From Gekko japonicus (taxonomy: Eukaryota): 64,000 bases of DNA. The stretch is taken from contig NW_015176486.1 in assembly GCF_001447785.1 (NCBI RefSeq), positions 91,862 through 155,861 of the forward strand, written 5' to 3'. Shown one piece after another: positions 5,506-61,716 of the stretch. Numbering within the stretch: the first letter of the stretch is position 1; every line of letters begins with the position of its first letter. Made by a program: the position numbers and the translations under genes. The notes under the pieces are model-generated. The model did not search any database. It worked only from the letters and a program-made list of their open reading frames with translations, and was not told the origin of the DNA.

Positions 5506-5600
5506 CTCGGGTCAACAGGGAAAGGACTTGAGGCGCAGTCGCGGTGGAGAGTCTCTCTCCCCAAAGGGCCCTGCCTGGGTAACCCAGAGAGAGCAACGAC

Positions 5601-11913: not shown

Positions 11914-14900
11914 ATGCATTGCCCCACATGGCTGACCCTCTTCTTGTGGTATTGCTCTCAGAACACAGCGGTTGTATCCCATTCTTTCCTGCCACCCCCA
12001 CTGTCAGTCACCTGTTCGGACCCTCAACACCGAGTCTATCAGAAGCGGGACAATGAACACCATGTCTCATGCTTGTGGGACAGGGACATCCACCTGGAGT
12101 ATTNNNNNNNNNNNNNNNNNNNNNGTGAACAGCAGCCCCCTCCTCACTGCCGCTGGTACCGAGACTCCATCTTGGTTCACCATACAAATAACTGGTCAGG
12201 ACGACTGGTGGTGGGCGCAGGCTTGGTCAGCAGAGCTTCCTATCCACCTTGGGTCTTCACACGTATCACCGTGCAGTGTGTGTCATCTGTGTGCTATGGG
12301 CCCACGTGCCTCCACCACAACCTGAGCATTGAAGTGACTGGGCAGGATGTCCGTCTCTTCCTGCTTCGGCCACGCCAGCTTCCCGTCCGTGAATGGCAGC
12401 CAGTGGAGTTGGGTTGGTGTGCACGCCTTAAGAGATCTACCTGGATCTACCGCTTCAGGAGTCAGGGGGGAAGTCCTGAAGGCCAGCTTATTCCCAGCAA
12501 CCAGCACAGCGAACCAACTGCAGCCACTGTTTACCCCCATGCAGAATTGCACCAAGTGTGTGAATCCTATTATAGCTACCACACGACAGTGAGGTACCCA
12601 GTGCGTGGATTCTACACTGTGTCACTCCACATTGAAAACGGGCCTCAGTCGAGTCGTAGCCTAGAGTTGCAAGTGCAGCCTGCCCTGCTTCATGTCTTCA
12701 CTGCCTCTTCCAAACTGCTGGGCTTCCCCCAGAGGACACTCAGCCTTTCCTGGACCCTCCAACCTCTCAGCTCCAGAATAACAGCTTTCATGTTGGCGGA
12801 GGAGCAGGGTCGGGGGGACTGGGACCACTCATGCAGTTATAACCCATTTGCTCTAGAACGTAATTTCTGTGCTGCACCCAAACCACAACATTCCGGGGAG
12901 AAAGTCATATCCAGCATCTACTTCCATACCAACAAAAGGATATCTGGAGAACTGAGAGGCAAACTCAATTTTGGGAGAGACACCCTACTTTTCACAGCAA
13001 GCAGAACGTCTCCAGCTCATCTCACCCTCAACCCGTGGAAGATAAGGACCGGCATTTACATTTTTAGCCATAAACAGGGCCTCTTCTATTCCACTCAAAA
13101 AAGCAGTGCTGTCAATGCCGCTGGTGACAACGCCAGCTCCCACTACATCTTTTACCAGCAGGAGAGCATCTCTTACCTCATCATCCTTAAATTTCTCCAG
13201 CGGCGATGGTATCGGTTCAACATGCACGTGTATTTGAACCGCAGAGGGATTCTATTCGGGTCTCTAGGAGAAAAAGGTATAGAAGTTCATGTTTTCAGTG
13301 ATCATTCGCCTGATAAAAACTTGGTCTATATTGTGTGGTTTATTCCTGTACAGCATCCTCTGTTGCAGTGTGAGTGGGCCTTCAACTTGCAACTTTTTGA
13401 TTCAAAGAACAACCATCTGGTTTGGAACAATACTTATTCTTACAAGGATCGTGTCAGAAACGCTGCCCGTTTTCTTCCCCAGTCTCTTTTACCTTTCAGA
13501 ACTGCACTCTACACAGGCTTTGTGGCAGAAGTGAACTGCAGAAGGACTGGACTTGCTCGAGCTGTTTTGAAAGCCACAGTCCACACTTACGCATCAAAGG
13601 TCTTAAAACCAGAGGTGCCTTGTCAAAAGAGTTTCTGTCATGAAGTGACTGCCGTAATCCAGAAACCCGATCCTTCTAACCCAGTCACAAGCTACTCAAG
13701 ACAGTCAGCAATTACCTTGAGAGCAACTGCAAAGGCACTGTGTAGGACACGTTCACATGTAGATATAATCTGGGAAATCTCCGGTGTTCATAATTCAGTC
13801 CCATCAGGAGCAACTAGCAGGATAAGGACAGGCGGAGTCACATTTCACATGCCCGGAAAGCTATTAAAGCCCGGCTTATATCGTCTCAGAATGACCATGA
13901 CAGTATACCTACCAGAATATAATATAACCATCAGAGAGTCTGATTCAGTTACCATAGATATTGTAGAAAGCGATCTGCTAGCAGTCATAGCCGGAGGCTC
14001 TTTCAGGACAGTAGGTGTTTCTGATCGTTGGACTTTGGATGCATCCGCTTCTTCTGACCCGGATTCAGACAACCCCCAGGAAGGACTCTTGCTTAACTGG
14101 TTGTGCTCCAAACGAGAATCAGATTTTTTAGAGCGGAAGCTGAGCCCACGTGGAAGATGCCGTCCAGATCAAGAGACTTTGAAATGGACGGATTCCCACA
14201 ATCCAGTCCAAACAGTACAACAAGAAACATTTCAACCAAATAATACGTATTATTTTGTTCTGAGAATTACTAAAGACAGAAAAACAGCAGATGCTTATCA
14301 GACAGTTCAGGTACTGCCTGGCTCTCTTCCTGTGCTGAATTTCACCTGTATTCAAAACTGTGGAAGAAACATTATACCAGCTAAAAGACTAATTCTTTAT
14401 GGGAAATGTTTAAACTGTAAAGGTAAACCGGTCATCTACCACTGGTCTCTTCTTTCATCAAGCTCCAAGAAAATACCCTTTGACTGGGATGCCAAAACTT
14501 CCACTGGGAGGTCAAATCCCTACCTAAGCATCAATCCTTTGGCTTTCAACACTTTGCCACACAAATCTTACACTCTTAGCCTCACAGCAAGCACGCAAGG
14601 AAGCCAAGAAGCTACTTACAAATATTCATTTTCTATTAATGCTCCACCACGGATTGGGAAGTGTAGCATTTATCCAAGGGTAGGCACAGCATTCCTTACG
14701 ACATTTGTTGTCCAGTGTAGTGGATTTGAAGATGAACATGGACCTCTTACATATAAAATCACGGCGCATTCTGACGAAACGAAAATAGGTAAAACGTCAT
14801 TTCTAGAGAATACTTCACTTGGAACAGTAGTATATGTAGGTCATCAGCATAAAATTCTTCCATCTTTTCTTCCCCTTGGTGCACCATCTAAAAATTATGC

Positions 14901-17900
14901 CTTGATAGTGTGTGTTCAAGTGTATGATGCCCTTGGAGCATATTCTCAAGAAAGTTTGCAAGCCACGGTGCATGATCCGAGAAAGAATAAGCCAACTGAT
15001 GGTGTTCTCAATGAACTACACAATTTAATCAGTGGCCCCACGGCAATCTTCTTCGAAGCAAAGGATTACTTTAATATAGGTTATTATACATATATGGCGG
15101 CCTCAGTATTAAACAATATTGAGGCATCACCAGCCATTCATGGCTCTAAAACTGATTTGCGGGAAGCTTTCCTTAATGTGTCTGCAAGGATTCCAATGAC
15201 TGAGGTTGAGGTAATAAGGCAAGTGATTGCCAGTATCTGTCAAATAACACAGGATGTCACAGAAGTAAATGGGAAATCACAGCTTCTCGCAGTGAGAAAA
15301 CTAAAAGAAGCCAGCGAAGCTCTACAAAGGCACAAAACCCAAGACCTGGGTTCTAAGGAAACAGAAATCCTTGTCCATGGTATATTTACTGGGCTGTCAA
15401 ATGTGTTGGCAGCTGCTCTATTAAAAAGTAGGCACGTCAATGTAAATTCAGTTAAGGAAACCATTGCTGTGACAGAGATACTAGCAAACTTAGTATTACA
15501 GGACAAAGTACCTGGAGAGTACGAAACTAATCTAGAAACTAAATACTGGGCCATTCATCTACGGAAAGATGAGAAGCAGGATGTTTCTCACACTTTTAAA
15601 GAAAGAAACTGTAAGAACTGCTTCTATCCCAAACTGAAGAAGGAAAATGACACTGACTTACCGGCAGATGCTGTGGTTTCCACAGTTTTGTATGAATTTG
15701 TTGAGAATCCCTTCCCTTGGCTTTTGGACACAGTAGTTAGTCACACAATAGTGACTGGGTTTAGGATGACCGCCGCGAAAGAAAATGGTGACATCGTAGG
15801 GATCACACCTGAGATTGCAGAAGTGATGATAGACATACAACACAAGGATTCCACCACCTTTGGCCTAACTGTAGGGCCAGCTAAAAATCACCATAAGACA
15901 ACAGGAGGCTTTAGTTTTGAAGTGAAGAGAATCTCCAAAGACGTATTTATCCAGATTGTGAGTAACCTAACGGTTACTTTCAATGTCTCTCTCTACCTTG
16001 GGCTCAATGTCAGCCATCCTCCAATAATTTCTTATATTGCTTCCTCTGACAAACCTCCAGTACTCAGTGGAAAGCATTCTAATATTAGTAACTGTGCAAT
16101 TAAGGCTCCATATATCCTTTGTCTTCCTCAGTCGTTGCTTCGGACTTTAGTGGAAGGCAGCTCAGCAGACAAATGGAACATCTCGGTTGTCTTACAATCC
16201 CATCCTATTGTGAGAGCCCAAACCACAAAGATTGTTCGCATTGCTGTTTTTGCAGCGGAGTGTCTAGATTTAGATGGGGTTCAGAACCAGTGGAGAGAAG
16301 GAACATGCAATCTTGGGTCTCAGACCAGCTGGTCCAAGATACATTGTATTTGCAAATTAAAAGACAGTGTCATAAGAACAAAAAGGTCCAGGTCGACAGG
16401 GACCTCCAGATTGGGTACCAGATTTCTGAGTGGTACATTTCAGCTTTATCCCAATCCTTTGGATATAAACAAGGTCCTTTTAGCAGAATTTGACACAACT
16501 CCAGTGACACTATTTACAGTGTTTTTCATTTTTGCAATCTACATCTTTCTGATTATCTGGGCCACAATCAAAGATAAAGTCGATATGAAAAGAAAAGACA
16601 AAATCCTTGTTTTGCCAGATAATGACCCTTTTCACAGAGTTTGCTACCTGGTCACTGTATACACAGGAAGTCGGCTGGGATCTGGAACCACAGCGGATGT
16701 CTTTATCGAACTGACAGGCCAAAACGCTGTCAGTGATGTCCATCGCTTAGAACACCCAACTTTCCCAATCCTCTTTCGTGCAGCTGTTGACACCTTTCTC
16801 TTAACCACCAAGACAGATTTAGGAGACATTTCCTCTCTTCATGTCTGGCACAATAATGGTGGTGCTTCCCCTAACTGGTACTTAAGCCGAGTTAAAGTAC
16901 AAAATGTACAAACGAAAGAGTCCTGGCTGTTTTTATGTCGAAGCTGGTTTGGTCTCGGTAAGGACTGCAAAATAGAAAGATCGTTTCCTGTTACTGACAA
17001 AGCCATACCTTTAAAAAAGATGGATTACTTCTTGATAAAACTTGCCAAAGACTTGGAAGACAGCCATGTGTGGCTCTCTCTCTTTTCTCACGTTGTCACT
17101 GGTCCTTTCAACAGAGTTGAGAGAATATCTTGTTGCTTGGCAATCATGCTCTCCAGCCTATTATTTAACATCATGTTCTTCAGTGGTGAACAGGACCAAC
17201 AGGTTATTTCGATACAGCTACGTTATATGAAATCTATGTATATTGGGTTTGTGAGTGCTTTCTTTTCTATTCCTGTGCACCTGACAATCATAACTTTATT
17301 TAGATATTCACAAGAAAAGCCTTTGGATCTCCAGACAGATGAGTATGAGCAAAAGAGATGTTTCCTTTTTATGTCTGCAAGCTCTCTCGTAAACTGGAAT
17401 GTCCGATGTCCGTCACCACCAAACACTAATTATAGCAACAATTCTTCAGTGGAGAAGGACACAGACACGAAGACACTAAGGAAGTTCATGCACCGAGTGT
17501 TGCGCTTTATTAAGAGACCACAGTTTCCATGGTGGTGCAGATATGTCTCTTGGACATTGGTCTTTTTAATATCTACAATGGCATCTTTTTTAATCATATT
17601 ATATGGTTTGACCTATGGTTACACAACATCATTGGAGTGGTTTATAGCATCCATGACATCGTTTTTTGAGAGTGTCTTTTTGCTTCAAACTTTGAAGATG
17701 GTTCTTATCTCAGCTATTAGCACTGTATTTACAAAACACTGTAAAAATATCTCCTGGATAAACACAGAAAAATATGAGAAGATGAAGCTGGAGAAAGCAA
17801 TTGTAGATGGTAAAGACATGAGGACGCTGCACCATGAACTTGTACAACTTAGAGGGTCCTGGGAATACGAACCTTTAGAAGAGGATAAAATCATCATTAT

Positions 17901-19539
17901 GAGGGAGAGAACAAAGGCCCAAAACCTAGCCTTTGTTTTTATAAGGGATATTATTGCTCATGTAATCTTCTCATCCTGTGTTTTAAGCATCGCTTACTCA
18001 ACAGATACCACTACTAGCTTTTATTACAATCAAGTTATTTATAATAAATTCTCTGCCAATCTATCCCTAGTAAATAAACTGGAGGATGTGTACAGATGGA
18101 CACGCAATGTCTTTGTGCCACTGATACACAATGATTATCAACCAACCTATCTTTCAGACACTTCAGCTAAAATCTTTGGTTTGCCCAGAATGAGGCAAAT
18201 AAGAGCCACAAATACTGAAAAAAAATGTTTCCATTTACACAGCTTTGTAAATAGTTTTCTGCGTAATGAAAGCCATTGCCATCATAAATATGGAACTGAT
18301 CCAGAAGATGAAGCTGATTATATTGGATCATGGACAAACCCCATGCCTAAATCCACTTCCAAACATTCCAGCAGTATTCAAGGGTTTACCTATGAGCCAG
18401 ACGTTGATAAGTGGAAATATAAATCTTATGGTGTTTTGAACACATATGGGCCAGGGGGGTACAGCTTTTATTTTTTCCCTGGAGAGCAGCGACCCAATAC
18501 AACACTGAGGCTGGATGATATTCAAAGAAACTACTGGCTAGATGAGAAGACCTGGGTAGTGATCTTTGAGCTGACCATTTTCAATCCGGACATAGATCAG
18601 TACTGCAGCATCACAGTCATGTTTGAGACTTCTGGTATTGGAGTTGTGGATGCCAGCTTGTCAGTTCGTACTTATAAACTGTCTACTTTGCATCTTCAAA
18701 CCAAGTCCCAGATAGCAGCATATGGAGTTATGACATTCATTCTGGTCTTTTACCTTGCTGATGAATTTCATATGTTACATCAGGAAAGGATGGGCTACCT
18801 GAAAAGAACAACTAACTTAATCAATCTTGCCATGAAGATCAGCTGTATACTTTTCATAGTGTTAATTGCACTCAAATTCAAACTGGCTTATAACTTAATA
18901 GACTTTTACCTTCTTAATCCAGAAAAATTCGTTCCTTTTCATGTGGTTTCTCAAATTGATCAGCTCTATGGGATGGTTGCCGGATTTTTGACCTTTCTTC
19001 TGCTTTTAAAACCTTATCGCTATTTCAGATTCATGTATGATGTGCGTCTAGCAGCAGCCACCATAGCAGCCGCTCTCCCAGTGTTCGTTTCCTTGACCAT
19101 GCTTACTGGTCTGGTCTTTTTGGTACACATATCATTTGGATACCTATTATTGTGCGAATACGAATGGAGTTATAATTCTGTGATTCATGCTACCCAGACC
19201 GTTGTTTCATATTGTATTCATGTGGCATCACTTCAAGACATTCAGTTTCCATCCAATACATTCCTGGGGATCTCATTCCGAGTCTTATTCATGTTTACAG
19301 TTACTTGTGTTCTCATCAGTTTATGGCGTGCTGTAATTATCTTTACCTACACATCCATGAAAAAGCCTACCTATGAACAGCATTCTGATGAAGCAGCAGC
19401 AGTAGATTTTGTAGTCTATAAAATCCAAAGTCTATGGTTTTTCATCACTCATCAGACACCATCCACAAGGAACAGTGACCTTCTGAACAGTATAATATTT
19501 GGAAAACCAAGAGCACAAAAGTGGAAGGCAGGAAAATGA
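11914..19539 (+). CDS. PKDREJ: PKDREJ-like polycystin-1 family protein, divergent paralogue (copy A), intronless, ~2541 aa
   Basis: Single ORF with signal-peptide-like start (MHCPTWLTLFLWY), REJ module (LDASASSDPDS, CSGFED), GPS-like C-W-C-CxC, TM1, PLAT (YLVTVYTGSRLGSGTTADV, WHNNGGASPNWYL), TOP (GLPRMRQ, YGPGGY, WLDEKT) and channel TMs. Start chosen by homology to copy B (ccaaagATGcat vs cctaaaATGcac). A 20-N gap lies at 12104-12123. Confidence 0.93.
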   Translation: MHCPTWLTLFLWYCSQNTAVVSHSFLPPPLSVTCSDPQHRVYQKRDNEHHVSCLWDRDIHLEYXXXXXXXXEQQPPPHCRWYRDSILVHHTNNWSGRLVVGAGLVSRASYPPWVFTRITVQCVSSVCYGPTCLHHNLSIEVTGQDVRLFLLRPRQLPVREWQPVELGWCARLKRSTWIYRFRSQGGSPEGQLIPSNQHSEPTAATVYPHAELHQVCESYYSYHTTVRYPVRGFYTVSLHIENGPQSSRSLELQVQPALLHVFTASSKLLGFPQRTLSLSWTLQPLSSRITAFMLAEEQGRGDWDHSCSYNPFALERNFCAAPKPQHSGEKVISSIYFHTNKRISGELRGKLNFGRDTLLFTASRTSPAHLTLNPWKIRTGIYIFSHKQGLFYSTQKSSAVNAAGDNASSHYIFYQQESISYLIILKFLQRRWYRFNMHVYLNRRGILFGSLGEKGIEVHVFSDHSPDKNLVYIVWFIPVQHPLLQCEWAFNLQLFDSKNNHLVWNNTYSYKDRVRNAARFLPQSLLPFRTALYTGFVAEVNCRRTGLARAVLKATVHTYASKVLKPEVPCQKSFCHEVTAVIQKPDPSNPVTSYSRQSAITLRATAKALCRTRSHVDIIWEISGVHNSVPSGATSRIRTGGVTFHMPGKLLKPGLYRLRMTMTVYLPEYNITIRESDSVTIDIVESDLLAVIAGGSFRTVGVSDRWTLDASASSDPDSDNPQEGLLLNWLCSKRESDFLERKLSPRGRCRPDQETLKWTDSHNPVQTVQQETFQPNNTYYFVLRITKDRKTADAYQTVQVLPGSLPVLNFTCIQNCGRNIIPAKRLILYGKCLNCKGKPVIYHWSLLSSSSKKIPFDWDAKTSTGRSNPYLSINPLAFNTLPHKSYTLSLTASTQGSQEATYKYSFSINAPPRIGKCSIYPRVGTAFLTTFVVQCSGFEDEHGPLTYKITAHSDETKIGKTSFLENTSLGTVVYVGHQHKILPSFLPLGAPSKNYALIVCVQVYDALGAYSQESLQATVHDPRKNKPTDGVLNELHNLISGPTAIFFEAKDYFNIGYYTYMAASVLNNIEASPAIHGSKTDLREAFLNVSARIPMTEVEVIRQVIASICQITQDVTEVNGKSQLLAVRKLKEASEALQRHKTQDLGSKETEILVHGIFTGLSNVLAAALLKSRHVNVNSVKETIAVTEILANLVLQDKVPGEYETNLETKYWAIHLRKDEKQDVSHTFKERNCKNCFYPKLKKENDTDLPADAVVSTVLYEFVENPFPWLLDTVVSHTIVTGFRMTAAKENGDIVGITPEIAEVMIDIQHKDSTTFGLTVGPAKNHHKTTGGFSFEVKRISKDVFIQIVSNLTVTFNVSLYLGLNVSHPPIISYIASSDKPPVLSGKHSNISNCAIKAPYILCLPQSLLRTLVEGSSADKWNISVVLQSHPIVRAQTTKIVRIAVFAAECLDLDGVQNQWREGTCNLGSQTSWSKIHCICKLKDSVIRTKRSRSTGTSRLGTRFLSGTFQLYPNPLDINKVLLAEFDTTPVTLFTVFFIFAIYIFLIIWATIKDKVDMKRKDKILVLPDNDPFHRVCYLVTVYTGSRLGSGTTADVFIELTGQNAVSDVHRLEHPTFPILFRAAVDTFLLTTKTDLGDISSLHVWHNNGGASPNWYLSRVKVQNVQTKESWLFLCRSWFGLGKDCKIERSFPVTDKAIPLKKMDYFLIKLAKDLEDSHVWLSLFSHVVTGPFNRVERISCCLAIMLSSLLFNIMFFSGEQDQQVISIQLRYMKSMYIGFVSAFFSIPVHLTIITLFRYSQEKPLDLQTDEYEQKRCFLFMSASSLVNWNVRCPSPPNTNYSNNSSVEKDTDTKTLRKFMHRVLRFIKRPQFPWWCRYVSWTLVFLISTMASFLIILYGLTYGYTTSLEWFIASMTSFFESVFLLQTLKMVLISAISTVFTKHCKNISWINTEKYEKMKLEKAIVDGKDMRTLHHELVQLRGSWEYEPLEEDKIIIMRERTKAQNLAFVFIRDIIAHVIFSSCVLSIAYSTDTTTSFYYNQVIYNKFSANLSLVNKLEDVYRWTRNVFVPLIHNDYQPTYLSDTSAKIFGLPRMRQIRATNTEKKCFHLHSFVNSFLRNESHCHHKYGTDPEDEADYIGSWTNPMPKSTSKHSSSIQGFTYEPDVDKWKYKSYGVLNTYGPGGYSFYFFPGEQRPNTTLRLDDIQRNYWLDEKTWVVIFELTIFNPDIDQYCSITVMFETSGIGVVDASLSVRTYKLSTLHLQTKSQIAAYGVMTFILVFYLADEFHMLHQERMGYLKRTTNLINLAMKISCILFIVLIALKFKLAYNLIDFYLLNPEKFVPFHVVSQIDQLYGMVAGFLTFLLLLKPYRYFRFMYDVRLAAATIAAALPVFVSLTMLTGLVFLVHISFGYLLLCEYEWSYNSVIHATQTVVSYCIHVASLQDIQFPSNTFLGISFRVLFMFTVTCVLISLWRAVIIFTYTSMKKPTYEQHSDEAAAVDFVVYKIQSLWFFITHQTPSTRNSDLLNSIIFGKPRAQKWKAGK

Positions 19540-19578
19540 TTTCTCTTTCCACTTAAGAAGAACACTGCTAAAAAAATG

Positions 19579-19584
19579 AATAAA
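19579..19584 (+). terminator. Candidate polyadenylation signal of copy A
   Basis: AATAAA 40 nt after the stop codon, followed by T/GT-rich sequence. Confidence 0.45.
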
Positions 19585-20207
19585 TTCTGTATTTCCATGG
19601 AATTTGTCTGAATATGCTGTCATGTTCAGTTGCCGTCTGTTCCACTTCACAACTATTTCTACTTCTGCTATTCATATGACTCCTGATTCTTTATGCGCTC
19701 TTAAACTATAGTGAACAATTTTTTCTGTGTGTCCTGTTGAGTGTTAAGGCCAAACTAGATTTGATGGCGCCCTCATGGCTGCAACAGGGACACCACCCCC
19801 ACTTTAAAGTGTTTAAAACTGGGGGGGGGGGGAGAGAAGTTCTGTTTACGTGTAGAAAACGGCCAGCCCTTGGCAGAGGTGACTGTGGGACAGAAAGGTA
19901 ATTTGTCATTTCTGATCCAAATGGACCCTTAGACATAAAGTTTGACCAATGACTTGTTCAGTGGCCAACTGTGGCTCTCTGTTTTTACTCATGAAATTGA
20001 CGGTTCTTTCAACAGACTAAAGAAGATGTCCTGTTGCTCAGCAATATTACTGAGTTCTGTGTTGTTTAACAGCATATTCTTCAGTACTGAGAAGAATAAA
20101 GGTAGCATTTCAGTATATCTGAGTTGTGTGACATCCATAAAAATCAGAATTCAAAGTGCCTTGCTTTCCATCCCTGTGGACCTGATTATAACAGCCTTAT
20201 TGAAGTA

Positions 20208-20500
20208 CTAGCAGTAAAGCCCATTGTAGAAGCAATAAAACGAGCTCTAGAAAGATGTGATGCGTAATGAATGCATAGAAAGGTACAGAAGTGGAAGTAA
20301 AGTCTCACACACACAGCCAGGCCACCTGGGGCTCTCCCATCCCCCCCCCCGGTCAAGCCTCCTGCGGCCCAGCCAGGCCGGCCTTGGCTCTCCCCCCCCG
20401 TTCAAGGCCCCTGCGGCCCAGCCAGGCCGGCCTTGGCTCCCCCCCCCCTTCAAGCCCCCTGTGGCCCAACCAGGCCAACCTTGGCTCTTCCACACACACC
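20208..20500 (-). mobile_element. Helitron-like 3' end with internal ~48-bp GC-rich minisatellite
   Basis: Minus strand: gctcgtt...aatgggc hairpin then CTAG|t at 20211-20208; unit cagccaggccggccttggctc(c)n-ttcaag-ccctgcggcc repeated about 3.5 times at 20313-20490. Confidence 0.55.
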
Positions 20501-21430: not shown

Positions 21431-21464
21431 AAACATTTATCCATTTCCATTCCTACTGGCTAGT

Positions 21465-21646
21465 CAGGGCTCCTTTTGTAGCAGGAACTCCTTTGCATAT
21501 TAGGCGACACACCCCTAAGGTAGCCAATCCTCCAAGAGCTTACAGTAGCCCCTGTAAGAAGAGCTCTGTAAGCTCTTGGAGGATTGGCTACCTTAGGGGT
21601 GTGTCGCCTAATGTGCAGGGGAGTTCCTGCTACAAAAAGAGCCCTG
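21465..21646. mobile_element. Near-perfect palindromic hAT-like MITE
   Basis: ~81-bp inverted arms (21465-21545, 21566-21646), termini cagggct / agccctg; relatives at ~50720-50878, ~53153-53397, ~58512-58871. Confidence 0.85.
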
Positions 21647-21990
21647 CACAATATTTCAAAAGGAGGTGGGATTTTCTTGGCGGTGTCCTCCAAAGCGTGT
21701 TTGTGTGAGTGTGCACGACCACACACATACTTGTAATAAAACGTGTACGTAAACAAATAAGGACATGGCTTCTTCAGATGAAGGCGAGATGAAATGGAAT
21801 ATTTTATGAGGGCTACAAAGAGGGCAAAGGATGGGAGACATGGCTTTTTGAGAGGGGCAGGGAAGTAGGGACCCTGGTTTCCCAGCAACGCATGGCATTC
21901 TAGAATCCATGTAAATGTTTCATCTATGGCAGTTGGGGATGCTGAGAGCCAGGGACTGCTCCTGATTCCAGCTTTTTGCATCACCCTAAA

Positions 21991-24900
21991 ATGCACCACA
22001 TGTTGTACCCCCTGATCCTCTTCTGGTACTGGGGCTGCTTCCAGTATCCAGCAGCCGTGGCCCCTCATTTACTGCCACCACCACTGCTGGTCACCTGCTC
22101 AGACCAACAAACGCGTTTCTCTCGGCAGCAAAATTACACTCTTTGGACTTCATGTCTGTGGGATGGAGACACCAAGCTGTACTACTGGAGAGACGCTGGG
22201 TTTGTTTCAAGAATTAGGAGGGGAGAGACAGATTTGTCATCTTCTCCTCATTGTAGCTGGTACTGGGGGTCAGCCTGGGTGCACAGCATGATTCTCTGGC
22301 CACGTTCGTGGTTGCCGGGCTCCAGCCTAGAAAGAAGAGCCTTACATTTGCCTTGGGACTCCAGCCGCATCCCTGTACGGTGTGTATCGCTCTCCTGCAG
22401 ACTGCCCTCGTGCCTTCACCGCAGCCTGAGCATTGAAGTGTTTGGCCAGGATCTCCAGCTGCTCCTGCTTTGGACACCCACACGTCCTACCCAAGAACAA
22501 CAACCGGTCCAGCTGGGCTGGTGTGCCCAACTCAACAGTTCAAGACAGCCCTCCCGCTACAGCAGTCAAGGAGATGAACCTGTGGCTTTGCTCCTCCCCG
22601 CTGCCCGCCTGGATTCTCCACACTACCATAGTGGTGACTTGTACCGCATGTGCACCTCCTATTTCAGCTACCACCTGACTGTGCATTATACCCACCAAGG
22701 ACTACATGTCGCTTCCCTCCGCACTAAGCATAGGCCTCAAGCCAGCTTTAGCCCGGACTTTCCAGTGGAACCCATTCTGGTACACATTCTCAGTGCCAAT
22801 TCCAAATGGCTCCATATCACTCATAGCACCATCAGCCTGTCCTGGAGCCTCTTACTTGTAAGCCCCAGAACAATGGCCTATAGGCTCTTGGATGTTGAGA
22901 GCGGGGGGTTCTGGTTTACCTCCTACAATCCATACGCTCTGCAGAACAATTACTCTGTTGGCCGTATTCCAGAGCATTCCAGGAAGAAGGTAGTGGCTGG
23001 CATATACTTTTGCACTGGAGAAGGGGGTACTGGCGAGCTGAGAGGGGAACTCAGGTACTCTGGTGCCACCTTAAGTCTAACATCTAAGAGTGAGCCACCA
23101 TCTCACTTCACTCTCAACATACGCAAAATCAAGACGGGCAGTTACCTTTTTAGCCCTGCCCAGGACCTGTACTATGCCACCCAAGAAGGAAGTGCTCCTG
23201 GTGACCTGTCCAGCATACACTACTTTTTCTACCAGCAACAAAGCATCTCCTACCTATTTACCATTGAGTTTCTCCAACTGCAATGGTACAAGTTCAACGT
23301 ACATCTGTACCTTAACCGAAAGGGAGTCCTTTCACAGAAGTCTTTCCCCGAGAAAAATATAGAAGTTCATGTTTTCAACAGCGGTCCTTCTTTTTTACAA
23401 AGTGTGATCTATATTGTGTGGTTCGTTCCCATCCAGCATCCGCTGCTGCAGAATGAGTGGACCTTCAAGTTGCAGTTGTTTGATTCAAGAGATGAGTTTC
23501 TCATACAGAACAACACTTACACATACAGGGATCGTGTAGAAAATGCTACCCATTTTATTCCTCACTCTGTTTTACCTTTCAATCCTGTCTTGTACACAGG
23601 CTTTGTAGCCCAAGTGAACTGTACCAGAAGCCGATTGATATGGGCTGTTTTGAAAGCTACGATCAACACTTATGCTTCAAAGGAAAGCAACTCCCTGGTT
23701 GCTTGCCTTCAAAAAAATTGTTTTATCAAGAAAGTGAATATATGGAAACCTGATATTTCTAACCGTGTCTTAAAGTACAGTAAAGGGACCTCATTTACTC
23801 TGTCTGCTGACATACAGATGAACTGTCCAAGTCCTAAACAAAGACACAACATCTGGAAAATCTACAAGGTCTCAGACATGAAGACTACTCCTGATTGGTC
23901 AAAACCTTTTTATCCACCTGGCTTTGGAAGGCTAGATCTCGTCATGTTAGAAGTTCCTGGTTCTACTTTAGATGATGGCTTGTATCTCTTTAATTTTACA
24001 GTGAAATTAATCACAGTGGATACTTTGGAGAGTGTAGAAGGCTCTGATTCTGTGTTTGTCCAGATTGGGTCTGGTAGTCTTGTGGCCGTCATTACTGGAG
24101 GCAATTTCCGGACAGTTGGATTTTCGGATCAATGGACCCTAGATGGATCCTCTTCCTATGATGGTGATCCTGCCTTTCCTTCTGAAAGACTCACGTTTAC
24201 TTGGTACTGCACCAAGCAAAAATCAGACTATGTATCTATGACGCTAAGTCTGAAGGGAAAATGTCGCCCAGATCAGGAGGGCTTGAAATGGACAACATCC
24301 TTGGATGCAGTTCAAACAGTGCCGCCTGAAGCACTTCAAGAAAATTCTGTTTATTATTTTTGCCTTGTGGTTCAAAAGGGTGACAGGATAGCTCGGGAAG
24401 AACAAACGGTCCGTGTACAGCCAAGCTCTGTGCCAGCTCTGAACATCACATGCATTGAAAATTGTGGCAGGTCCGTCACTCCCACTGAAAGATTTTGTCT
24501 CTCTGGCAAGTGCACAAACTGTAAGAAACTGAGCAAACCACTCTATCACTGGTCACTTCTCATGGCAAATTTCACTGAGGTAAATTTTGATTGGGATGCC
24601 AAGTCTACAACCGGAAGGTCCAGTCCTTACATATGTATAAAATCACTGAGTTTTGTAAATATGACAGAAGAGACATACATTCTTACTCTAAAAGCAAGCA
24701 TCTGGAGATACCAGACATCCGTTTATAGCTATTTATTTTTTGTAAATTCTCCACCTCAGATTGGAAAGTGCTTGCTTAAGCCTACCACAGGGATTGCATT
24801 TCTAACAAAATTTGTTGTTCGTTGTAGTGGGTTTAAAGATAAACATTTGCCTCTTACATATAAAATCAGAGCAGCATCACACACCCTAACAATTACCAGA

Positions 24901-27900
24901 AAGTCTTCTACAGAAAACAGCAACCTGGGGACAATTGTGTATTCTGGTTATCAGCCTAAAATTCCACCATCTTTGTTACCCATTGGCATCCCCTCTAAGC
25001 AATATGCCTTGCCAATCTATATTGAGGTATATGATGCCCTTGGAGCATTTTCCCAATTAACCTTACAGGCAAAGGTACACGGTCCATTCAAGGGTAAGCA
25101 AACAGAGGTTACTCTAAATGAATTACATAATTTTTCCAGTGGACCAAAGGCTCCAATAACACATTTTCTTGAAAGTGGGGATTACTTTAATGCGGGATAT
25201 TTCATCTACATGGTGGCTTCTGCTTTAAATAACATTGAAGCGCTGAAAAGATTTCACTCCTCTAAGACTAAACTACGGGAAATCCTTCTGAACAGGTTTG
25301 CAGGAATCCCTGCAAAAGGTGTAATGGAACTAAACCAAATGGTCTCAGGAATTTCTCAAATAACTCAGGAAGTCACGGAAGTAAATAGGAAATCACAACT
25401 CCTTGCAGTCAGAAAGCTCAAAGAACTGAGTGAAGAATTGAAAAGGTACAGAGATAAAAACATAGGCTCTAAGGAGACAGAAGTTCTCAGCACCGGTATT
25501 TTTGAAGGGCTGTCTAATATCCTGAAAGCCTCTCTGTTAGACATCAGAAATGTCCATAGAAATGGAGTGGAAGAAACTCTCTCTGCCGCTGAAATTTTAG
25601 CAGAACTCGTCTTACAAGGTAAAGTTCCTGGAGAAAATGAAACTCTTATAGAAACCAGTGATTGGACCATCACCATTAGGAAAGATGAAAAATGGGATGT
25701 TTCTGGTACTTTCTCTAACAGAGAAGTCTGTAAGAATTGCTTTTATTCTAAAATCAAGCCAGAGAGTCATGATGAGTTGCCATCAGATGCTGCAATCTCC
25801 ACTGTTCTTTTTGAGTTTCGTAGAAACCCCTTCTCCTGGTTGTCCCTTTCAGAAGATATGAGCACAATGGTGACTGGATTCAAAATGACAGGAACCAGAT
25901 CTAATGGTGACACAGTGGGGATCATACCTGAAGTAGCTGAAATGATCATGCCTAGAAAAGACAAGGGCCCCGCCATCTTTGAGCTGAAGATTGGACACGG
26001 CAGAGGATGCCACAAAACGACTGGAGGCTTTAGTTTTGAAGTACCTAGGAACTCCAAAGACGTTTTCATCCAGATTGTGACCGAACTGAAGTTTACTTTC
26101 CAAATGTTTGTTTATCTAGACCTCAATACCAGCCATCCTCCTGTTGCATCTTTCAGTGTTTCCCATAACAAGAACACAGTAACGAGAGGAACAAAGTCTA
26201 AGGGCCATGACTGTGCAGCTCAAGCCCCTTATATATTTTGTCTCTCCCGCTCTTTGCTCAGATCCATTTTCCAAGGTAACAGTGCAGAAAAATGGAACGT
26301 CTCTATTGTTTTACAATCAGATCCATTCAAGTGGGACCCAAGCGTTCAGGCCATTGGTATCCGGCTTTTTACTGCCGACTGCTTATCCCTAGATGGAATC
26401 CAGGGTCAATGGAAAAAAGATGTCTGCAGCCTTGGCTCTCAGACGAGCTGGGAGAAGTTACATTGCATCTGCACAGCCAAAAAAAGGACTCCAAGGACAG
26501 CAAGTCCTCAACCAGGAAGAACGTCCAAAAACAACATAAGGTTTTTGGCTGGCAAAATCAATGTGTACCCTGATCCGGTAGATATGAAGGAAGTCTTGTT
26601 GGTACAAACCAACAACAATCCAGTAACGACGGTGACAGTACTTTTCATTTTTGTCATATACATTTGCTTGGCTTTTTGGACAACAAGGAAAGACAGGGCT
26701 GATATGGAAAGCAGGGATCGTGTCATAGTCTTATCAGACAATGATCCCTACGACCAAGTATGCTACTTCGTCACAGTACATACGGGGAGTCGCTTCGGAG
26801 CAGGAACCACAGCCGACGTTTTCATTCAGCTGATAGGCCACCGGGGTGCTAGTGATATACATTGCTTAAGACACCCTGAATACCCAACTCTTGCGCGTGG
26901 AGCCGTCAACACTTTTCTCCTGAGTAGTAAGAATGACCTTGGAGACATTTATTCCTTTCGCACTTGGCACAATAATAGAGGTTCATCTCCTAACTGGTTC
27001 TTGAGCAGAATCAAAGTGCAAAATGTGCTTACCAAACAATCTTGGATGTTCATGTGCCAAAAATGGTTTGCGCTCAATAAGGATGATGGTCTAATAGAGA
27101 GGTCCTTTGTCGTTACTCATCCAACCACACCTTTAAGCAAAGTGGATTTCTTCTTGATAAATCTCACCTATGAGTTGGGAGAGACCCACTTATGGCTTTC
27201 TGTTTTTGCTCACAGCAACATCGGTTCTTTTAACAGGCTTCATAGATTGTCTTCTTGCTTAGCAATACTGTTGTGCATCCTGTTCTTTAACATTATGTTC
27301 TTCGACGCTGACAAGGACGAACTAGTGGTTTCTGAACAGCCATGGTATCTGAGGTCTCTACTGACGGGAATTCAAAGTGCCTTCATTTCCTTCCCTTTGC
27401 AGATGTTTATAACTGCTTTGTTCAAGTACACCCAGCGGGAGCCTTTGCCACAGGAGCCATCTAATACTCAGCCTAAAAAATATTCTGCTCCCATGTCTAG
27501 AAATCTTAGGAACTGGAAAGAGGGTTTGCAGAAATGGTGCGTTGCAGAAATGGCTCCAAAATGTCTAGGCTATCATTTCCAAAAGGACCCTTCCAGTGCT
27601 CCAGATTCACGCAGTCTGGAACAGCGGAGCAGAAAAAGATGGGGGCAGGTGGCAAAAAAAACGAGTAACTGTACCATTTCTGAAGGGGATGCAAACAGAA
27701 TTGCAACGGAAGAGGACGTGGTTCGTGAGGCCAATGCCACCAACAATTTGAATAGTAGAAATGAGAAGAAAGGTCCGTATCCTCAGACAAAACCGCTAAA
27801 TAGTCTCATCATGATCCTTCATAAAAGCCCACAAATAATAATTTCCTGGTGGTATATGTATGTTTTGTGGGTGTTGGTCTTGGCCACTTTGACAGTATCA

Positions 27901-29898
27901 TCATTTTTTATCATATTTTATGGTCTGTCCTATGACTATGAAACGTCCTTTGAGTGGCTTGTGGCATCTAGCATCTCATTTTGTGCGAGTGTGTTTTTGC
28001 TTCAGACCTTGAATGTTGGTTTTTTCCCAACCCTGAGGACTGTCTATCCAAAATTCTGTGAAGACATCCCATGGTCCAGCAGAGAGACCTACTTAGAGAT
28101 TAAACTAGACAATATCACGATGGATGCTGATGAGATGCGAGAGTTACATTACAACCTAGTCAGACTTCGAGGAACCAAGCAATACCATCCCTTGGAAGAG
28201 GAGGAAATCACTCTTTTTAAGAAAAAGCAGAAGATTCAAAGGCAAGCTTTTGTTTTCATAAAGGATGTCATATGTCACTTCATCTTTCTAATTCTTATTT
28301 TAAACATTGCCTGCTCGATAGAAAACAGCACTAGTTTTTACTACAATCAAGATATTCATACCAAATTCTCTCGGGGGCTCGATGATATAAGCAAGTTAGA
28401 GCACGTTTACACTTGGCTGAAGAATGTCTTTCTACACTTGATCCACAACATAGACCACCCAACTTATCTTTCAAAGTCCTGGTCCAAAATCCTGGGGTTG
28501 CCCAGGATGCGACAAATAAGAGCAAAAAACACGTCAAAGGAATGCTTTCACTCACGCAGTTTGGTAAATAGATTTCTGATTAGAAACAGCCATTGCCTTC
28601 ACAAGTATGGACAAGACCCAGAAGATCGACAAGATCACCTTGGGCTGTGGACAGATTTTGCCAATAGATCAGATTCCAACCTTTTTAGCAATTTTTCAGG
28701 CTACACTTACTATTCAGTCACTGATCAATGGAGATATGCTTCATATGGAGAAATGAATACTTATGGAGCAGGAGGGTATACTTTTCATTTCTATCCAGAA
28801 GAACGACAGACCAATTCTACAAAAAGAATTGCTTTTTTAGAACAGAGAAGGTGGCTGGATGAAAATACCTGGGCATTAATAGTTGAGCTGACAACTTTTA
28901 ATTCAGATGCAGATTTATTTTGCAGTATCTCAGTTGTTTTTGAGATGTCTGGCTTAGGCCCTGTTAACACAAGCTTGTCAATCCATTCATACAGACTCCC
29001 AGTTTTCCAGAAGCTAAGCAACACACAAAAGTTGGTGTACATTATTGTTGCTTATATGCTGGTCTTTTATATCATTGATGAAGTTTGCATGGTGGAGCAA
29101 CAGAGACTAAAATACGTCAGAAATATTTCTAACTTAATTAACTTCGGGATAAAGACAGTCTGTCTGTTTTTCCTTTTGTACCTTTCCTTCAAATTTAAGC
29201 TGGCTTCTAGCTTAATAGAGCTTTACTTACATCATCCAAATGAATTCATTCCATTCCATAAAGTTTCCCACGTCGATCAAACAATAAGGGTTACCCTGGG
29301 TTTTTTGATCTTTCTTATCATTTTGAAAACTCTGCGATATTCTCGATTCTTTTACGATGTGCGCCTGGCTCAGCGCTCCATGTTAGCCGCCCTCCCTGGA
29401 ATCTGCTCCATGGCGCTGGTGGTGGCCGTGTACTTTTTTGTCTACATGGCCTTTGGCTACCTGGTATTTGGCCAATATGAATGGAACTACCATACTATGA
29501 TTCATTCTGCTCAGACGGTATTCGCGTACTGTGTTTCAGCTTTTAAAGACACGGCCTTTTCATCCAATAGGGTGCTCGGAAGTCTCTTCCTGTCTTCGTT
29601 TATGATGGTCATGATCTGCGTGCTGATCAATTTATTTCAAGCGGTGATCATGTCCTCCTATGAGGACATGAAGCAACCGGTCTACGAAGAGCCTTCCGAT
29701 GAAGCGGAAGTGGTCAAATTTCTGTGTCACAAGATCCGCAGGATGTGGTTTATTGTGACCTGCAGGACACCACCTGAAAGCGATGCAGAACTTTTCATCC
29801 GAGTCCTCTATGGTCATTCTGAAAGGAGAAACTCACGTCACCTGGGACTCAAAGCCAGGAAAATAAATGGCCGGAAAATGGTTTACCTTGTTGTTTGA
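21991..29898 (+). CDS. PKDREJ: Polycystin family receptor for egg jelly (copy B, canonical-looking orthologue), intronless, ~2635 aa
   Basis: Same architecture as copy A; channel region LKTLRYSRFFYDVRLAQR...GYLVFGQYEWNY...CVLINLFQAVI...MKQPVYEEPSDE and terminus INGRKMVYLVV match mammalian PKDREJ as recalled; lies adjacent to CDPF1 as in mammals. Confidence 0.97.
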   Translation: MHHMLYPLILFWYWGCFQYPAAVAPHLLPPPLLVTCSDQQTRFSRQQNYTLWTSCLWDGDTKLYYWRDAGFVSRIRRGETDLSSSPHCSWYWGSAWVHSMILWPRSWLPGSSLERRALHLPWDSSRIPVRCVSLSCRLPSCLHRSLSIEVFGQDLQLLLLWTPTRPTQEQQPVQLGWCAQLNSSRQPSRYSSQGDEPVALLLPAARLDSPHYHSGDLYRMCTSYFSYHLTVHYTHQGLHVASLRTKHRPQASFSPDFPVEPILVHILSANSKWLHITHSTISLSWSLLLVSPRTMAYRLLDVESGGFWFTSYNPYALQNNYSVGRIPEHSRKKVVAGIYFCTGEGGTGELRGELRYSGATLSLTSKSEPPSHFTLNIRKIKTGSYLFSPAQDLYYATQEGSAPGDLSSIHYFFYQQQSISYLFTIEFLQLQWYKFNVHLYLNRKGVLSQKSFPEKNIEVHVFNSGPSFLQSVIYIVWFVPIQHPLLQNEWTFKLQLFDSRDEFLIQNNTYTYRDRVENATHFIPHSVLPFNPVLYTGFVAQVNCTRSRLIWAVLKATINTYASKESNSLVACLQKNCFIKKVNIWKPDISNRVLKYSKGTSFTLSADIQMNCPSPKQRHNIWKIYKVSDMKTTPDWSKPFYPPGFGRLDLVMLEVPGSTLDDGLYLFNFTVKLITVDTLESVEGSDSVFVQIGSGSLVAVITGGNFRTVGFSDQWTLDGSSSYDGDPAFPSERLTFTWYCTKQKSDYVSMTLSLKGKCRPDQEGLKWTTSLDAVQTVPPEALQENSVYYFCLVVQKGDRIAREEQTVRVQPSSVPALNITCIENCGRSVTPTERFCLSGKCTNCKKLSKPLYHWSLLMANFTEVNFDWDAKSTTGRSSPYICIKSLSFVNMTEETYILTLKASIWRYQTSVYSYLFFVNSPPQIGKCLLKPTTGIAFLTKFVVRCSGFKDKHLPLTYKIRAASHTLTITRKSSTENSNLGTIVYSGYQPKIPPSLLPIGIPSKQYALPIYIEVYDALGAFSQLTLQAKVHGPFKGKQTEVTLNELHNFSSGPKAPITHFLESGDYFNAGYFIYMVASALNNIEALKRFHSSKTKLREILLNRFAGIPAKGVMELNQMVSGISQITQEVTEVNRKSQLLAVRKLKELSEELKRYRDKNIGSKETEVLSTGIFEGLSNILKASLLDIRNVHRNGVEETLSAAEILAELVLQGKVPGENETLIETSDWTITIRKDEKWDVSGTFSNREVCKNCFYSKIKPESHDELPSDAAISTVLFEFRRNPFSWLSLSEDMSTMVTGFKMTGTRSNGDTVGIIPEVAEMIMPRKDKGPAIFELKIGHGRGCHKTTGGFSFEVPRNSKDVFIQIVTELKFTFQMFVYLDLNTSHPPVASFSVSHNKNTVTRGTKSKGHDCAAQAPYIFCLSRSLLRSIFQGNSAEKWNVSIVLQSDPFKWDPSVQAIGIRLFTADCLSLDGIQGQWKKDVCSLGSQTSWEKLHCICTAKKRTPRTASPQPGRTSKNNIRFLAGKINVYPDPVDMKEVLLVQTNNNPVTTVTVLFIFVIYICLAFWTTRKDRADMESRDRVIVLSDNDPYDQVCYFVTVHTGSRFGAGTTADVFIQLIGHRGASDIHCLRHPEYPTLARGAVNTFLLSSKNDLGDIYSFRTWHNNRGSSPNWFLSRIKVQNVLTKQSWMFMCQKWFALNKDDGLIERSFVVTHPTTPLSKVDFFLINLTYELGETHLWLSVFAHSNIGSFNRLHRLSSCLAILLCILFFNIMFFDADKDELVVSEQPWYLRSLLTGIQSAFISFPLQMFITALFKYTQREPLPQEPSNTQPKKYSAPMSRNLRNWKEGLQKWCVAEMAPKCLGYHFQKDPSSAPDSRSLEQRSRKRWGQVAKKTSNCTISEGDANRIATEEDVVREANATNNLNSRNEKKGPYPQTKPLNSLIMILHKSPQIIISWWYMYVLWVLVLATLTVSSFFIIFYGLSYDYETSFEWLVASSISFCASVFLLQTLNVGFFPTLRTVYPKFCEDIPWSSRETYLEIKLDNITMDADEMRELHYNLVRLRGTKQYHPLEEEEITLFKKKQKIQRQAFVFIKDVICHFIFLILILNIACSIENSTSFYYNQDIHTKFSRGLDDISKLEHVYTWLKNVFLHLIHNIDHPTYLSKSWSKILGLPRMRQIRAKNTSKECFHSRSLVNRFLIRNSHCLHKYGQDPEDRQDHLGLWTDFANRSDSNLFSNFSGYTYYSVTDQWRYASYGEMNTYGAGGYTFHFYPEERQTNSTKRIAFLEQRRWLDENTWALIVELTTFNSDADLFCSISVVFEMSGLGPVNTSLSIHSYRLPVFQKLSNTQKLVYIIVAYMLVFYIIDEVCMVEQQRLKYVRNISNLINFGIKTVCLFFLLYLSFKFKLASSLIELYLHHPNEFIPFHKVSHVDQTIRVTLGFLIFLIILKTLRYSRFFYDVRLAQRSMLAALPGICSMALVVAVYFFVYMAFGYLVFGQYEWNYHTMIHSAQTVFAYCVSAFKDTAFSSNRVLGSLFLSSFMMVMICVLINLFQAVIMSSYEDMKQPVYEEPSDEAEVVKFLCHKIRRMWFIVTCRTPPESDAELFIRVLYGHSERRNSRHLGLKARKINGRKMVYLVV

Positions 29899-61260: not shown

Positions 61261-61716
<456 letters not shown>

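What the first reader, a model, noticed from the sequence alone, without database searches (positions are those of the whole stretch)
11914..29898. Two intact, anciently diverged, intronless PKDREJ genes in tandem
Seen: two uninterrupted 7.6-7.9 kb ORFs, same strand, ~2.4 kb apart, colinear from start codon to tail, roughly half to two-thirds identical by eye (PLAT domain near the upper end), with no visible flank homology. Known: human and mouse have a single intronless PKDREJ at this locus, a testis/sperm-associated polycystin-1 family protein related to sea-urchin REJ. Inference: an old duplication with both copies under purifying selection, giving a two-receptor polycystin system in a reptile lineage, with B conserved and A specialised. 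Automated annotations may list a PKDREJ-like locus, but I know of no functional description.
Basis: partly seen in the sequence, partly recalled or inferred. Interest (0 to 1): 0.85.

Follow-up and report, generated by a model that had tools for sequence, protein, structure and literature searches.

The report
Gecko tandem PKDREJ paralogs, known
The window holds two intact, 47%-identical, intronless PKDREJ (sperm-type polycystin-1 family) genes side by side in a gecko, but they are the survivors of a squamate-wide three-gene tandem set already published in 2019, and a decayed scrap of the lost third gene still lies between them.

Summary
ORF A (11914-19539, 2541 codons as written) and ORF B (21991-29898, 2635 codons) lie on the same strand, 2451 bp apart. 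They are colinear and 47% identical, and both carry REJ, PLAT, polycystin and PKD_channel domains. CDPF1 and PPARA exons downstream reproduce the human 22q13 gene order.

The 21-N gap sits in codons 64-71 of A. Both flanks are in compatible frames, and homologues predict about 42 unread bases, so continuity is plausible but unproven.

Karin et al. 2019 (PMC7038749) already reported three tandem PKDREJ copies in squamates, one of them absent in geckos. RefSeq annotates the "-like" copies.

My trees show B is the tetrapod orthologue. A belongs to a squamate-only clade that is sister to a third clade lacking geckos.

Three results are new here:
- A roughly 370-440 bp pseudogene relic at 19842-20280, best placed in that third clade.
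- A and B orthologues evolve at equal protein rates (median ratio 1.06).
- A's divergence is concentrated in the pore and C-tail, with a clade-wide S6 change of FQ to WR.

I found no RNA support in three runs.

The parts
11914..19539 (+). PKDREJ paralogue A. It is A-type, which by elimination equals PKDREJ_C of Karin et al. 2019. 2541 codons as written. Domains: REJ 13741-15036, PLAT 16645-16986, polycystin/TOP domain 18061-18681, PKD_channel 18709-19359.
   Evidence: ORF. Pfam. Falls in the squamate-only A clade with gecko orthologues at 75-80% identity. Best solved relative is PKD1L3, 7d7e_A, 109 bits.
12104..12124 (.). Assembly gap (21 N) inside codons 64-71 of A.
   Evidence: The flanks are in compatible frames, and homologues have 15 residues across the span, implying about 42 unread bases. 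Not filled and not read.
19324..19329 (+). S6 codons W2471-R2472 of A. This is the A-clade signature 'NLWRA', where B and outgroups have 'NLFQA'.
   Evidence: W in 22/22 and R in 20/22 (plus 1 K) A-type sequences. F in 22/22 and Q in 21/22 B-type. F/Q in 16/17 outgroups. The position aligns with the L of 'NMFLAII' in PKD2L1.
19579..19584 (+). AATAAA 40 nt after A's stop codon. Candidate polyadenylation signal.
   Evidence: Motif only, not verified by reads.
19842..20280 (+). Pseudogene relic of a third PKDREJ copy, covering the end of PLAT to TM3 (about 122 codons). The core is 19842-19931 in one frame and 19939-20208 in another. It has at least one frameshift and several in-frame stops.
   Evidence: tblastn E 1e-27 to Rhineura C-type. 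DNA repeat families D3 and D6 link it to A and B. hmmsearch i-E 2e-34. Translation. Tree places it in the C-type clade at 100/93. A recent copy of gecko A is rejected, p-AU 0.0006.
21991..29898 (+). PKDREJ paralogue B, the orthologue of the single tetrapod PKDREJ (PKDREJ_A of Karin et al.). 2635 codons. Domains: REJ 23806-25209, PLAT 26764-27084, polycystin/TOP 28378-28998, PKD_channel 29008-29670.
   Evidence: ORF. Pfam including Ion_trans. Falls in the B clade with geckos at 77-85% identity. PKD1L3 7d7e_A, 136 bits. The database model from this genome (P0122) covers only residues 652-2635, window 23944-29895.
40176..40250 (+). First coding part of CDPF1 (flank marker).
   Evidence: Weak Pfam C6_DPF match, E 0.008, below the cutoff, at profile positions 1-25. 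ORF seen. Gene order matches human 22q13 as I recall it.
61258..61698 (-). Nuclear-receptor ligand-binding-domain exon, read as PPARA (flank marker).
   Evidence: Pfam Hormone_recep, E 4e-11. ORF. The PPARA assignment rests on my reading of the sequence and on synteny.

Best explanation
The window is the PKDREJ locus of a gekkonid-like gecko. On the squamate stem the single intronless PKDREJ gene was duplicated twice in tandem, giving the order A-type, C-type, B-type on one strand next to CDPF1/PPARA. B-type is the direct orthologue of the tetrapod gene and keeps an almost invariant S5-pore-S6 and C-tail. The A/C lineage changed that region after duplication. A-type then fixed its own S6 signature (FQ to WR at the gate-equivalent position) and has been conserved since. 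Geckos lost the middle C-type gene by deletion and decay, leaving a relic of roughly 370-440 bp in the A-B spacer. Both surviving genes encode full polycystin-1-family receptors: signal peptide, REJ ectodomain, non-canonical GPS region, TM1, PLAT, and a TOP domain plus 6-TM channel-like module. The next step is inferred, not shown. By analogy with the solved PKD1-PKD2 and PKD1L3-PKD2L1 1:3 complexes, each would occupy one position of a heterotetramer with PKD2-family subunits. B would contribute an ancestral-type pore helix/S6, and A would place a positive charge at the gate, as I recall PKD1 does. That would make A a sensor subunit with altered or blocked conduction. A reproductive (sperm) role is extrapolated from mouse and sea urchin only.
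For: ORFs and domains. Synteny. Trees: in the 80-row tree (SH-aLRT only) the squamate, B, A+C, A and C clades each have 100 support. In the 29-row careful tree they have 100/100. Geckos are sister to other squamates in both A and B, and no gecko falls in C. Turtles, a crocodilian (P0124 cluster) and birds are single-copy. Gene order A-C-B comes from fused gene models: Crotalus P0035 is A+C+B and Vipera P0007 is C+B. Consecutive Phrynocephalus locus tags JRQ81_015611/12/13 agree. Relic. Selection: A-B dN 0.40, dS 1.4-1.7, omega 0.24-0.35, with PLAT 0.10 and TOP 0.15. A and B orthologue distances are equal. Full-length or near-full-length A-type proteins are annotated in about 20 other squamate species. 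Pore contrast. Structural relatives. Literature: Karin et al. 2019 report three tandem duplicates, PKDREJ_B absent in gekkotans, and transcripts of all loci in a Correlophus transcriptome.
Against: No RNA reads fell on A's 3' 2.5 kb or B's 5' 1 kb in three RNA-seq runs of this species. Tissues are unknown and only 3-12% of each run was read. The 21-N gap could hide a lesion in A. This genome contributes no A protein to the database, and B only as a 5'-truncated model. Cross-species codon dN/dS could not be computed, so lineage-specific constraint on the gecko A gene rests on protein rates and ORF integrity. The relic's C-type assignment is favoured at 100/93, but AU tests do not reject placing it with all A-type (p 0.17) or all B-type (p 0.09). 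Tuatara was not found, so a 'squamate stem' origin cannot be separated from a 'lepidosaur stem' origin.
Confidence: 0.85

Rival explanations
1. Copy A is a decaying or non-functional duplicate, an unprocessed pseudogene in the making, and only B is a working gene.
For: No RNA-seq coverage of A. No protein model for A from this genome in the database. A has lower PKD_channel bits (113 vs 188) and no Ion_trans hit. The assembly gap lies in its 5' end.
Against: A is a 2541-codon open frame whose orthologues are annotated at or near full length in about 20 other squamates. Its protein rate equals B's. Omega is about 0.28 overall and 0.10-0.15 in PLAT/TOP. The derived S6 residues W and R are kept in 22/22 and 20/22 species. 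The true pseudogene next door (the relic) accumulated stops and a frameshift in about 120 codons. B also had zero reads, so the RNA result does not discriminate between the copies.
Confidence: 0.05
2. The duplication is much older (stem sauropsid or amniote), with copies lost independently in turtles, archosaurs and mammals.
For: Turtle PKDREJ is slightly more similar to A (about 53%) than B is (47%). That could suggest deep paralogy.
Against: All three squamate paralogue clades form one clade, at 100 SH-aLRT and 100/100, excluding turtles, crocodilian, birds, mammals and amphibians. The turtle similarity is explained by short turtle branches (0.04-0.1). Karin et al. list PKDREJ_B and PKDREJ_C as not present in human, chicken, turtle, crocodile and Xenopus.
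Confidence: 0.03
3. The spacer fragment is not a remnant of the lost C-type gene. It is instead a stray partial copy of A or B, or a remnant of an even earlier extra copy.
For: AU tests cannot reject grouping it with all A-type (p 0.169) or all B-type (p 0.093). Only 128 columns are available, and the relic has a long branch (0.5).
Against: The best tree puts it inside C-type at 100/93. Its four most similar sequences are all C-type. A recent copy of gecko A is rejected, p 0.0006. It lies exactly where the C-type gene lies in vipers, on the same strand.
Confidence: 0.12

Closest known systems
Squamate PKDREJ_A / PKDREJ_B / PKDREJ_C tandem paralogues (Karin et al. 2019, Mol Biol Evol 37:904, PMC7038749)
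   Same: Same locus and same genes. Window B is PKDREJ_A, the orthologue of the human, chicken, turtle and crocodile gene. Window A is PKDREJ_C by elimination. The missing middle gene is PKDREJ_B, reported absent in gekkotans. All are single long exons of 7.8-8.1 kb.
   Different: That paper uses the genes as phylogenomic markers. As far as I read, it does not describe the in-situ relic, the equal A/B rates, or the pore/S6 divergence. It contains no functional work.
Mammalian PKDREJ (single intronless gene; mouse sperm-head protein affecting timing of fertilising competence)
   Same: B is its orthologue by tree and synteny. The domain set is the same.
   Different: Mammals have one copy. Expression and function in squamates are untested. 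The mouse function is from my own knowledge (Sutton et al. 2008) and was not checked here.
PKD1L3-PKD2L1 (PDB 7D7E/7D7F) and PKD1-PKD2 (PDB 6A70) 1:3 heterotetramers
   Same: The C-terminal 6-TM modules of A and B match PKD1L3 best (109 and 136 bits), then PKD2L1, PKD2 and PKD1. Neither copy has the PKD2L1 'LGD' filter. A carries a basic residue in S6, as I recall PKD1 does.
   Different: No partner subunit is in the window and no complex was tested. The equivalence of A's R2472 to the PKD2 gate leucine rests on the HMMER alignment plus my recall of PKD2 residue numbering.
Sea-urchin suREJ1/2/3 receptor-for-egg-jelly paralogues
   Same: Several REJ-domain polycystin-1-like paralogues in one genome, with a proposed sperm function.
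   Different: That expansion is independent and distant. Only the 22-25% identical PKD1-like deuterostome hits were seen here. The comparison is from memory.

Membership tests
Polycystin-1 family, PKDREJ subfamily | REJ domain in the ectodomain | tested here: met
   PF02010, E 5e-88 (A) and 2e-97 (B).
Polycystin-1 family, PKDREJ subfamily | PLAT/LH2 domain after the first TM helix | tested here: met
   PF01477, E 2e-19 (A) and 3e-22 (B). TM1 lies just upstream.
Polycystin-1 family, PKDREJ subfamily | C-terminal polycystin (TOP) domain plus 6-TM PKD_channel module, within an approximately 11-TM layout | tested here: met
   PF20519 and PF08016 in both copies. Ten hydrophobic peaks in each by a crude Kyte-Doolittle scan; nine of A's and all ten of B's fall in the expected TM layout. 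Both match PKD1L3 7d7e_A.
Polycystin-1 family, PKDREJ subfamily | GPS motif with the canonical His-Leu-Thr/Ser cleavage triad | tested here: inconclusive
   No PF01825 hit in A, B or any PKDREJ homologue listed. By eye, the Cys-x-Cys is followed by a basic insert instead of HL(T/S) in both copies. A cleavable GPS may not be a PKDREJ feature.
Polycystin-1 family, PKDREJ subfamily | Single uninterrupted coding exon | tested here: met
   For A this is conditional on the 21-N gap.
Orthologue of tetrapod PKDREJ | Groups with single-copy PKDREJ of other tetrapods by species-tree-like topology, and lies next to CDPF1/PPARA | tested here: met
   Met for B: B clade; flanking exons. A does not meet it, because it lies in a squamate-only clade.
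Squamate-only paralogue PKDREJ_C (Karin et al. 2019) | Squamate-restricted clade that includes gekkotans and is distinct from the copy absent in gekkotans | tested here: met
   The A clade has 24 rows including 7 gecko rows. The C clade has 16 rows with no gecko. The naming is matched by elimination.
Sperm receptor function (as for mouse PKDREJ or suREJ) | Testis or sperm expression | tested here: inconclusive
   Zero reads on 17001-19539 and 21991-23000 in three RNA-seq runs of unknown tissue. Karin et al. report transcripts of all their loci in a Correlophus multi-tissue transcriptome.

The most novel reading that the evidence does not exclude
The A-type gene is a roughly 200-My-old squamate-specific polycystin-1-like subunit. 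After duplication its pore module was remodelled, and a Trp-Arg pair was then fixed at the S6 gate position (R in 20/22 species), a change I recall as PKD1-like. Squamates would then run a two- or three-receptor PKDREJ system in which B conducts or gates in the ancestral way while A (and C where present) act as charge-blocked or differently gated sensor subunits. This might be tied to post-copulatory selection or long-term sperm storage. Geckos would be a natural knockout of the third member, with the relic as proof.
Probability: 0.3. Interest if true: 0.5.

Novelty: already known. Interest (0 to 1): 0.25.

Why it matters
PKDREJ is one of the few candidate vertebrate sperm-surface receptors, and it is usually treated as a single gene. 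One example is the Gekko japonicus genome paper, which reports a single omega of 0.25 for it. Analyses that assume 1:1 orthology in squamates can mix three paralogues. Several public gene models already fuse them: Vipera, Crotalus and probably Anolis (the Anolis case rests on the alignment). The existence of the paralogues is published, so the finding itself is not a discovery. What is useful here is a clean paralogue map (A, lost C with relic, B) and a testable contrast between the two survivors. B has a pore that is almost unchanged across the tetrapods sampled, with a few divergent mammals and birds. A has a derived but conserved, positively charged S6.

Tried and rejected
No orthologous DNA could be fetched, so there was no cross-species codon dN/dS, no branch-site test, and no direct look at neighbouring genes in other squamates. 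I used protein distances, the paralogue dN/dS and fused gene models instead.
- Read laying on 17001-23000 with three RNA-seq runs and one Logan run gave no depth on either gene. Only a dispersed repeat at about 21465-21646 collected partial reads from other copies, plus one 151-nt contig at 18919-19069 in a run of unknown type. This is not evidence of silence. I did not lay reads on the N gap.
- AU tests could not exclude relic+all-A (p 0.17) or relic+all-B (p 0.09).
- I considered a chimeric A/C origin of gecko A by unequal crossing-over. It is rejected because A is nearest to A-type in ten of thirteen 200-residue windows and tied in three: with C-type at residues 1-200 and 1001-1200, and with B-type at 2401-2541. 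The relic also lies downstream of A.
- I searched for further relics in the rest of the window with a family HMM and found none.
- Tuatara PKDREJ was not among the hits, so I could not narrow the timing beyond 'after the split from turtles and archosaurs, before crown squamates'.
- A word search of earlier scan notes returned nothing.
- The first MAFFT --auto run timed out and was redone with FFT-NS-2.
- I made no structure or complex prediction, because no binding claim depends on one.

Full report
**1. Observation**

The + strand holds two very long open reading frames: 11710..19539 and 21976..29898. The first ATGs, 11914 and 21991, align with each other. They also align with the annotated N-termini of orthologues (MHC.../MHCV...).

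This gives A = 2541 codons as written and B = 2635 codons, separated by 2451 bp. BLASTP aligns them end to end with 47% identity and 63% positives. Pfam finds REJ, PLAT, Polycystin_dom and PKD_channel in both, and Ion_trans in B only.

A crude hydropathy scan gives ten hydrophobic peaks in each copy. Nine of A's and all ten of B's fall in the polycystin-1 layout. Downstream lie a CDPF1-like first exon (a weak Pfam match) and a nuclear-receptor LBD exon that I read as PPARA. This is the order I recall from human 22q13.

**2. The gap**

N 12104-12124 falls in codons 64-71 of A. The left flank ends one base into a codon and the right flank begins two bases into one. Any gap length divisible by three therefore keeps the frame.

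All ten sequences printed around the gap (window A, five other A-type, three B-type, one turtle) align on both sides of it. The nine homologues each have exactly 15 residues between the anchors. The true unread stretch is therefore probably about 42 nt rather than 21, still in frame.

This makes continuity plausible, and it shows the scaffold join is in the right order and orientation. It cannot exclude a lesion in the unread letters. I neither filled the gap nor laid reads on it.

**3. What it is**

Searching both proteins against the large protein collection returns PKDREJ and 'PKDREJ-like' proteins only. The best hits are geckos:
- For A: Paroedura, Eublepharis, Sphaerodactylus and Euleptes at 75-79%.
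- For B: the same genera at 77-81%.

The window is therefore gekkotan, and by tree position it sits nearest Paroedura.

Most non-gecko squamates sampled have three proteins each, while geckos have two. An 80-row ML tree and a 29-row careful tree (all key nodes 100/100) agree on the following:
- All squamate sequences form one clade, sister to turtles plus (crocodilian plus birds).
- Inside that clade, B-type is sister to (A-type plus C-type).
- Geckos are the first branch in both the A and B clades and are absent from C.

P0124, sister to birds, belongs to an Alligator/Crocodylus cluster. So both duplications happened after the split from turtles and archosaurs and before crown squamates, and geckos lost C. 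Tuatara was not recovered, so a lepidosaur-stem origin is not excluded.

**4. The relic**

Masking A and B and searching the rest of the window with paralogue proteins found one more piece. It lies at 19842-20226 on the + strand and is homologous to the end of PLAT through TM3, with E 1e-27 to Rhineura C-type.

Three further results support it:
- The repeat finder independently links 19964-20045 and 20147-20208 to the matching places in A and B at 66-81%.
- A family HMM scores it at i-E 2e-34 and finds nothing else in the window.
- The translation needs a frame change and crosses several stops.

Its four most similar sequences are all C-type at 52-55%, against 47.5% to A and 45.4% to B. A careful tree on 128 columns puts it inside the C clade with support 100/93.

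AU tests give a mixed picture. They reject a recent copy of gecko A (p 0.0006). They do not reject placement beside all A-type (p 0.17) or all B-type (p 0.09).

Position supports the C assignment. A fused Crotalus model runs A, then C, then B. A fused Vipera model runs C, then B. Phrynocephalus locus tags 015611/12/13 are A, C and B. I read the fragment as the remains of the lost middle gene, with about 0.85 confidence.

**5. Selection and divergence**

Three lines of evidence remain.

(a) *Paralogue comparison.* A versus B over 2521 codons gives dN 0.40, dS 1.4-1.7 and omega 0.24-0.35. The lowest values are in PLAT (0.10) and TOP (0.15). dS is near saturation, so omega is if anything overestimated.

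(b) *Protein rates.* For 66 species pairs, protein distances of A orthologues and B orthologues over identical columns have a median ratio of 1.06, range 0.84-1.38. The genes are adjacent and share the local mutation rate. A is therefore constrained about as much as B, for which a published sauropsid omega is 0.25.

(c) *ORF integrity.* Full-length or near-full-length A-type proteins are annotated in about 20 other squamate species, while the neighbouring relic decayed.

Where the copies differ is regional. Mean within-clade identities for A, B and C are:

| Region | A | B | C |
|---|---|---|---|
| Channel S2-S6 | 0.65 | 0.85 | 0.61 |
| C-tail | 0.52 | 0.78 | 0.48 |

Elsewhere A and B are alike.

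The B-type S5-pore-S6 is almost unchanged from caecilians through turtles, crocodilian and platypus to squamates, with a few divergent mammals and birds. A-type has a fixed derived S6: W in 22/22 and R in 20/22 (plus one K), where B and outgroups have F and Q. That position aligns with the leucine of 'NMFLAII' in PKD2L1. From memory, this is the lower-gate leucine of PKD2.

'B conserved, A specialised' is thus true for the pore module and for the post-duplication stems (A+C 0.11 plus A 0.17, against B 0.14). It is not true for present-day rates.

**6. Mechanism**

*Shown:* domain architecture, paralogy, constraint, and the pore contrast.

*Inferred:* both proteins act like other polycystin-1-family members, as the single odd subunit in a 1:3 complex with PKD2-family channels. 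The closest solved relatives are PKD1L3-PKD2L1 and PKD1-PKD2. On this reading the REJ ectodomain is the sensing part, and A's Arg at the gate would alter or block cation flow, as I recall the basic S6 residues of PKD1 do.

A sperm role is extrapolated from mouse PKDREJ and sea-urchin REJ proteins, from my own knowledge and not tested here.

RNA-seq of this species gave no reads on either gene in the 6 kb I could test, which is uninformative. Karin et al. report transcripts of all their loci in a Correlophus multi-tissue transcriptome.

**7. Known or new**

Karin et al. [quoted passage not shown] They name them PKDREJ_A, PKDREJ_B and PKDREJ_C. They list B and C as not present in human, chicken, turtle, crocodile and Xenopus, and they note that PKDREJ_B is absent in gekkotans. 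RefSeq annotates 'polycystin family receptor for egg jelly-like' genes in several geckos.

No functional study of the squamate paralogues turned up. The finding as submitted is therefore already known as a gene arrangement. The relic, the rate equality and the conserved S6 signature are modest additions.

**8. Verdict**

This is a real, well-supported feature: two intact paralogues plus one fossil. It is correctly recognised as PKDREJ, but it is neither a two-gene invention nor undescribed. Interest is low to moderate. The main residual value is as a clean natural contrast for testing what the pore module of a PKDREJ-type subunit does.

Noticed in passing
window 19842-20280 (+): Pseudogene relic of a third PKDREJ copy (end of PLAT to TM3) in the A-B spacer, with stops and a frameshift.
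   Followed up: yes
window 20340-20485: Three tandem copies of a GC-rich 49-nt unit (82-100% alike), just downstream of the relic.
   Followed up: no
window about 21465-21646: Dispersed repeat upstream of B. It collects hundreds of RNA-seq reads, of which 96-98% run on into unlike sequence, so they are transcripts of other copies elsewhere in the genome.
   Followed up: partly
window 9379-10095: Local direct repeat. Units of about 100 and 121 nt recur at a spacing of 494-495 nt with 84-89% identity (D5/D7), upstream of A.
   Followed up: no
window 23944-29895 (protein P0122): The only database protein from this genome at the locus is a 5'-truncated B model, residues 652-2635. No A model from this genome was returned, so A may be unannotated there.
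   Followed up: partly
proteins P0007 (Vipera latastei), P0035 (Crotalus adamanteus), P0044 (Anolis carolinensis G1KQX6): Public gene models fuse neighbouring paralogues. P0007 is C-type 1-2019 plus B-type 2018-4393. P0035 is A+C+B pieces in that order. P0044 is mostly C-type with a B-like C-terminus. They are useful as evidence of gene order but are annotation errors.
   Followed up: partly
proteins P0086-P0100 (passerine birds): Passerine PKDREJ models are about 2000 aa and carry only REJ and PLAT Pfam hits, with no polycystin or PKD_channel domain. Other birds keep the channel module. This could be lineage-specific loss of the channel part or an annotation artefact.
   Followed up: no
window 4000-8000: CpG-rich block (GC 0.57-0.63) upstream of A, where the TTC38 promoter side would be expected by human synteny. 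No gene was identified here.
   Followed up: no
window 31791-32321 (+) and 60044-60394 (-): ORFs that look like C-terminal fragments of retrotransposon (LINE-type) ORF2 proteins, judged by eye.
   Followed up: no
window 31170-31198 and 47418-47478: Two further assembly gaps (runs of N) outside the finding.
   Followed up: no
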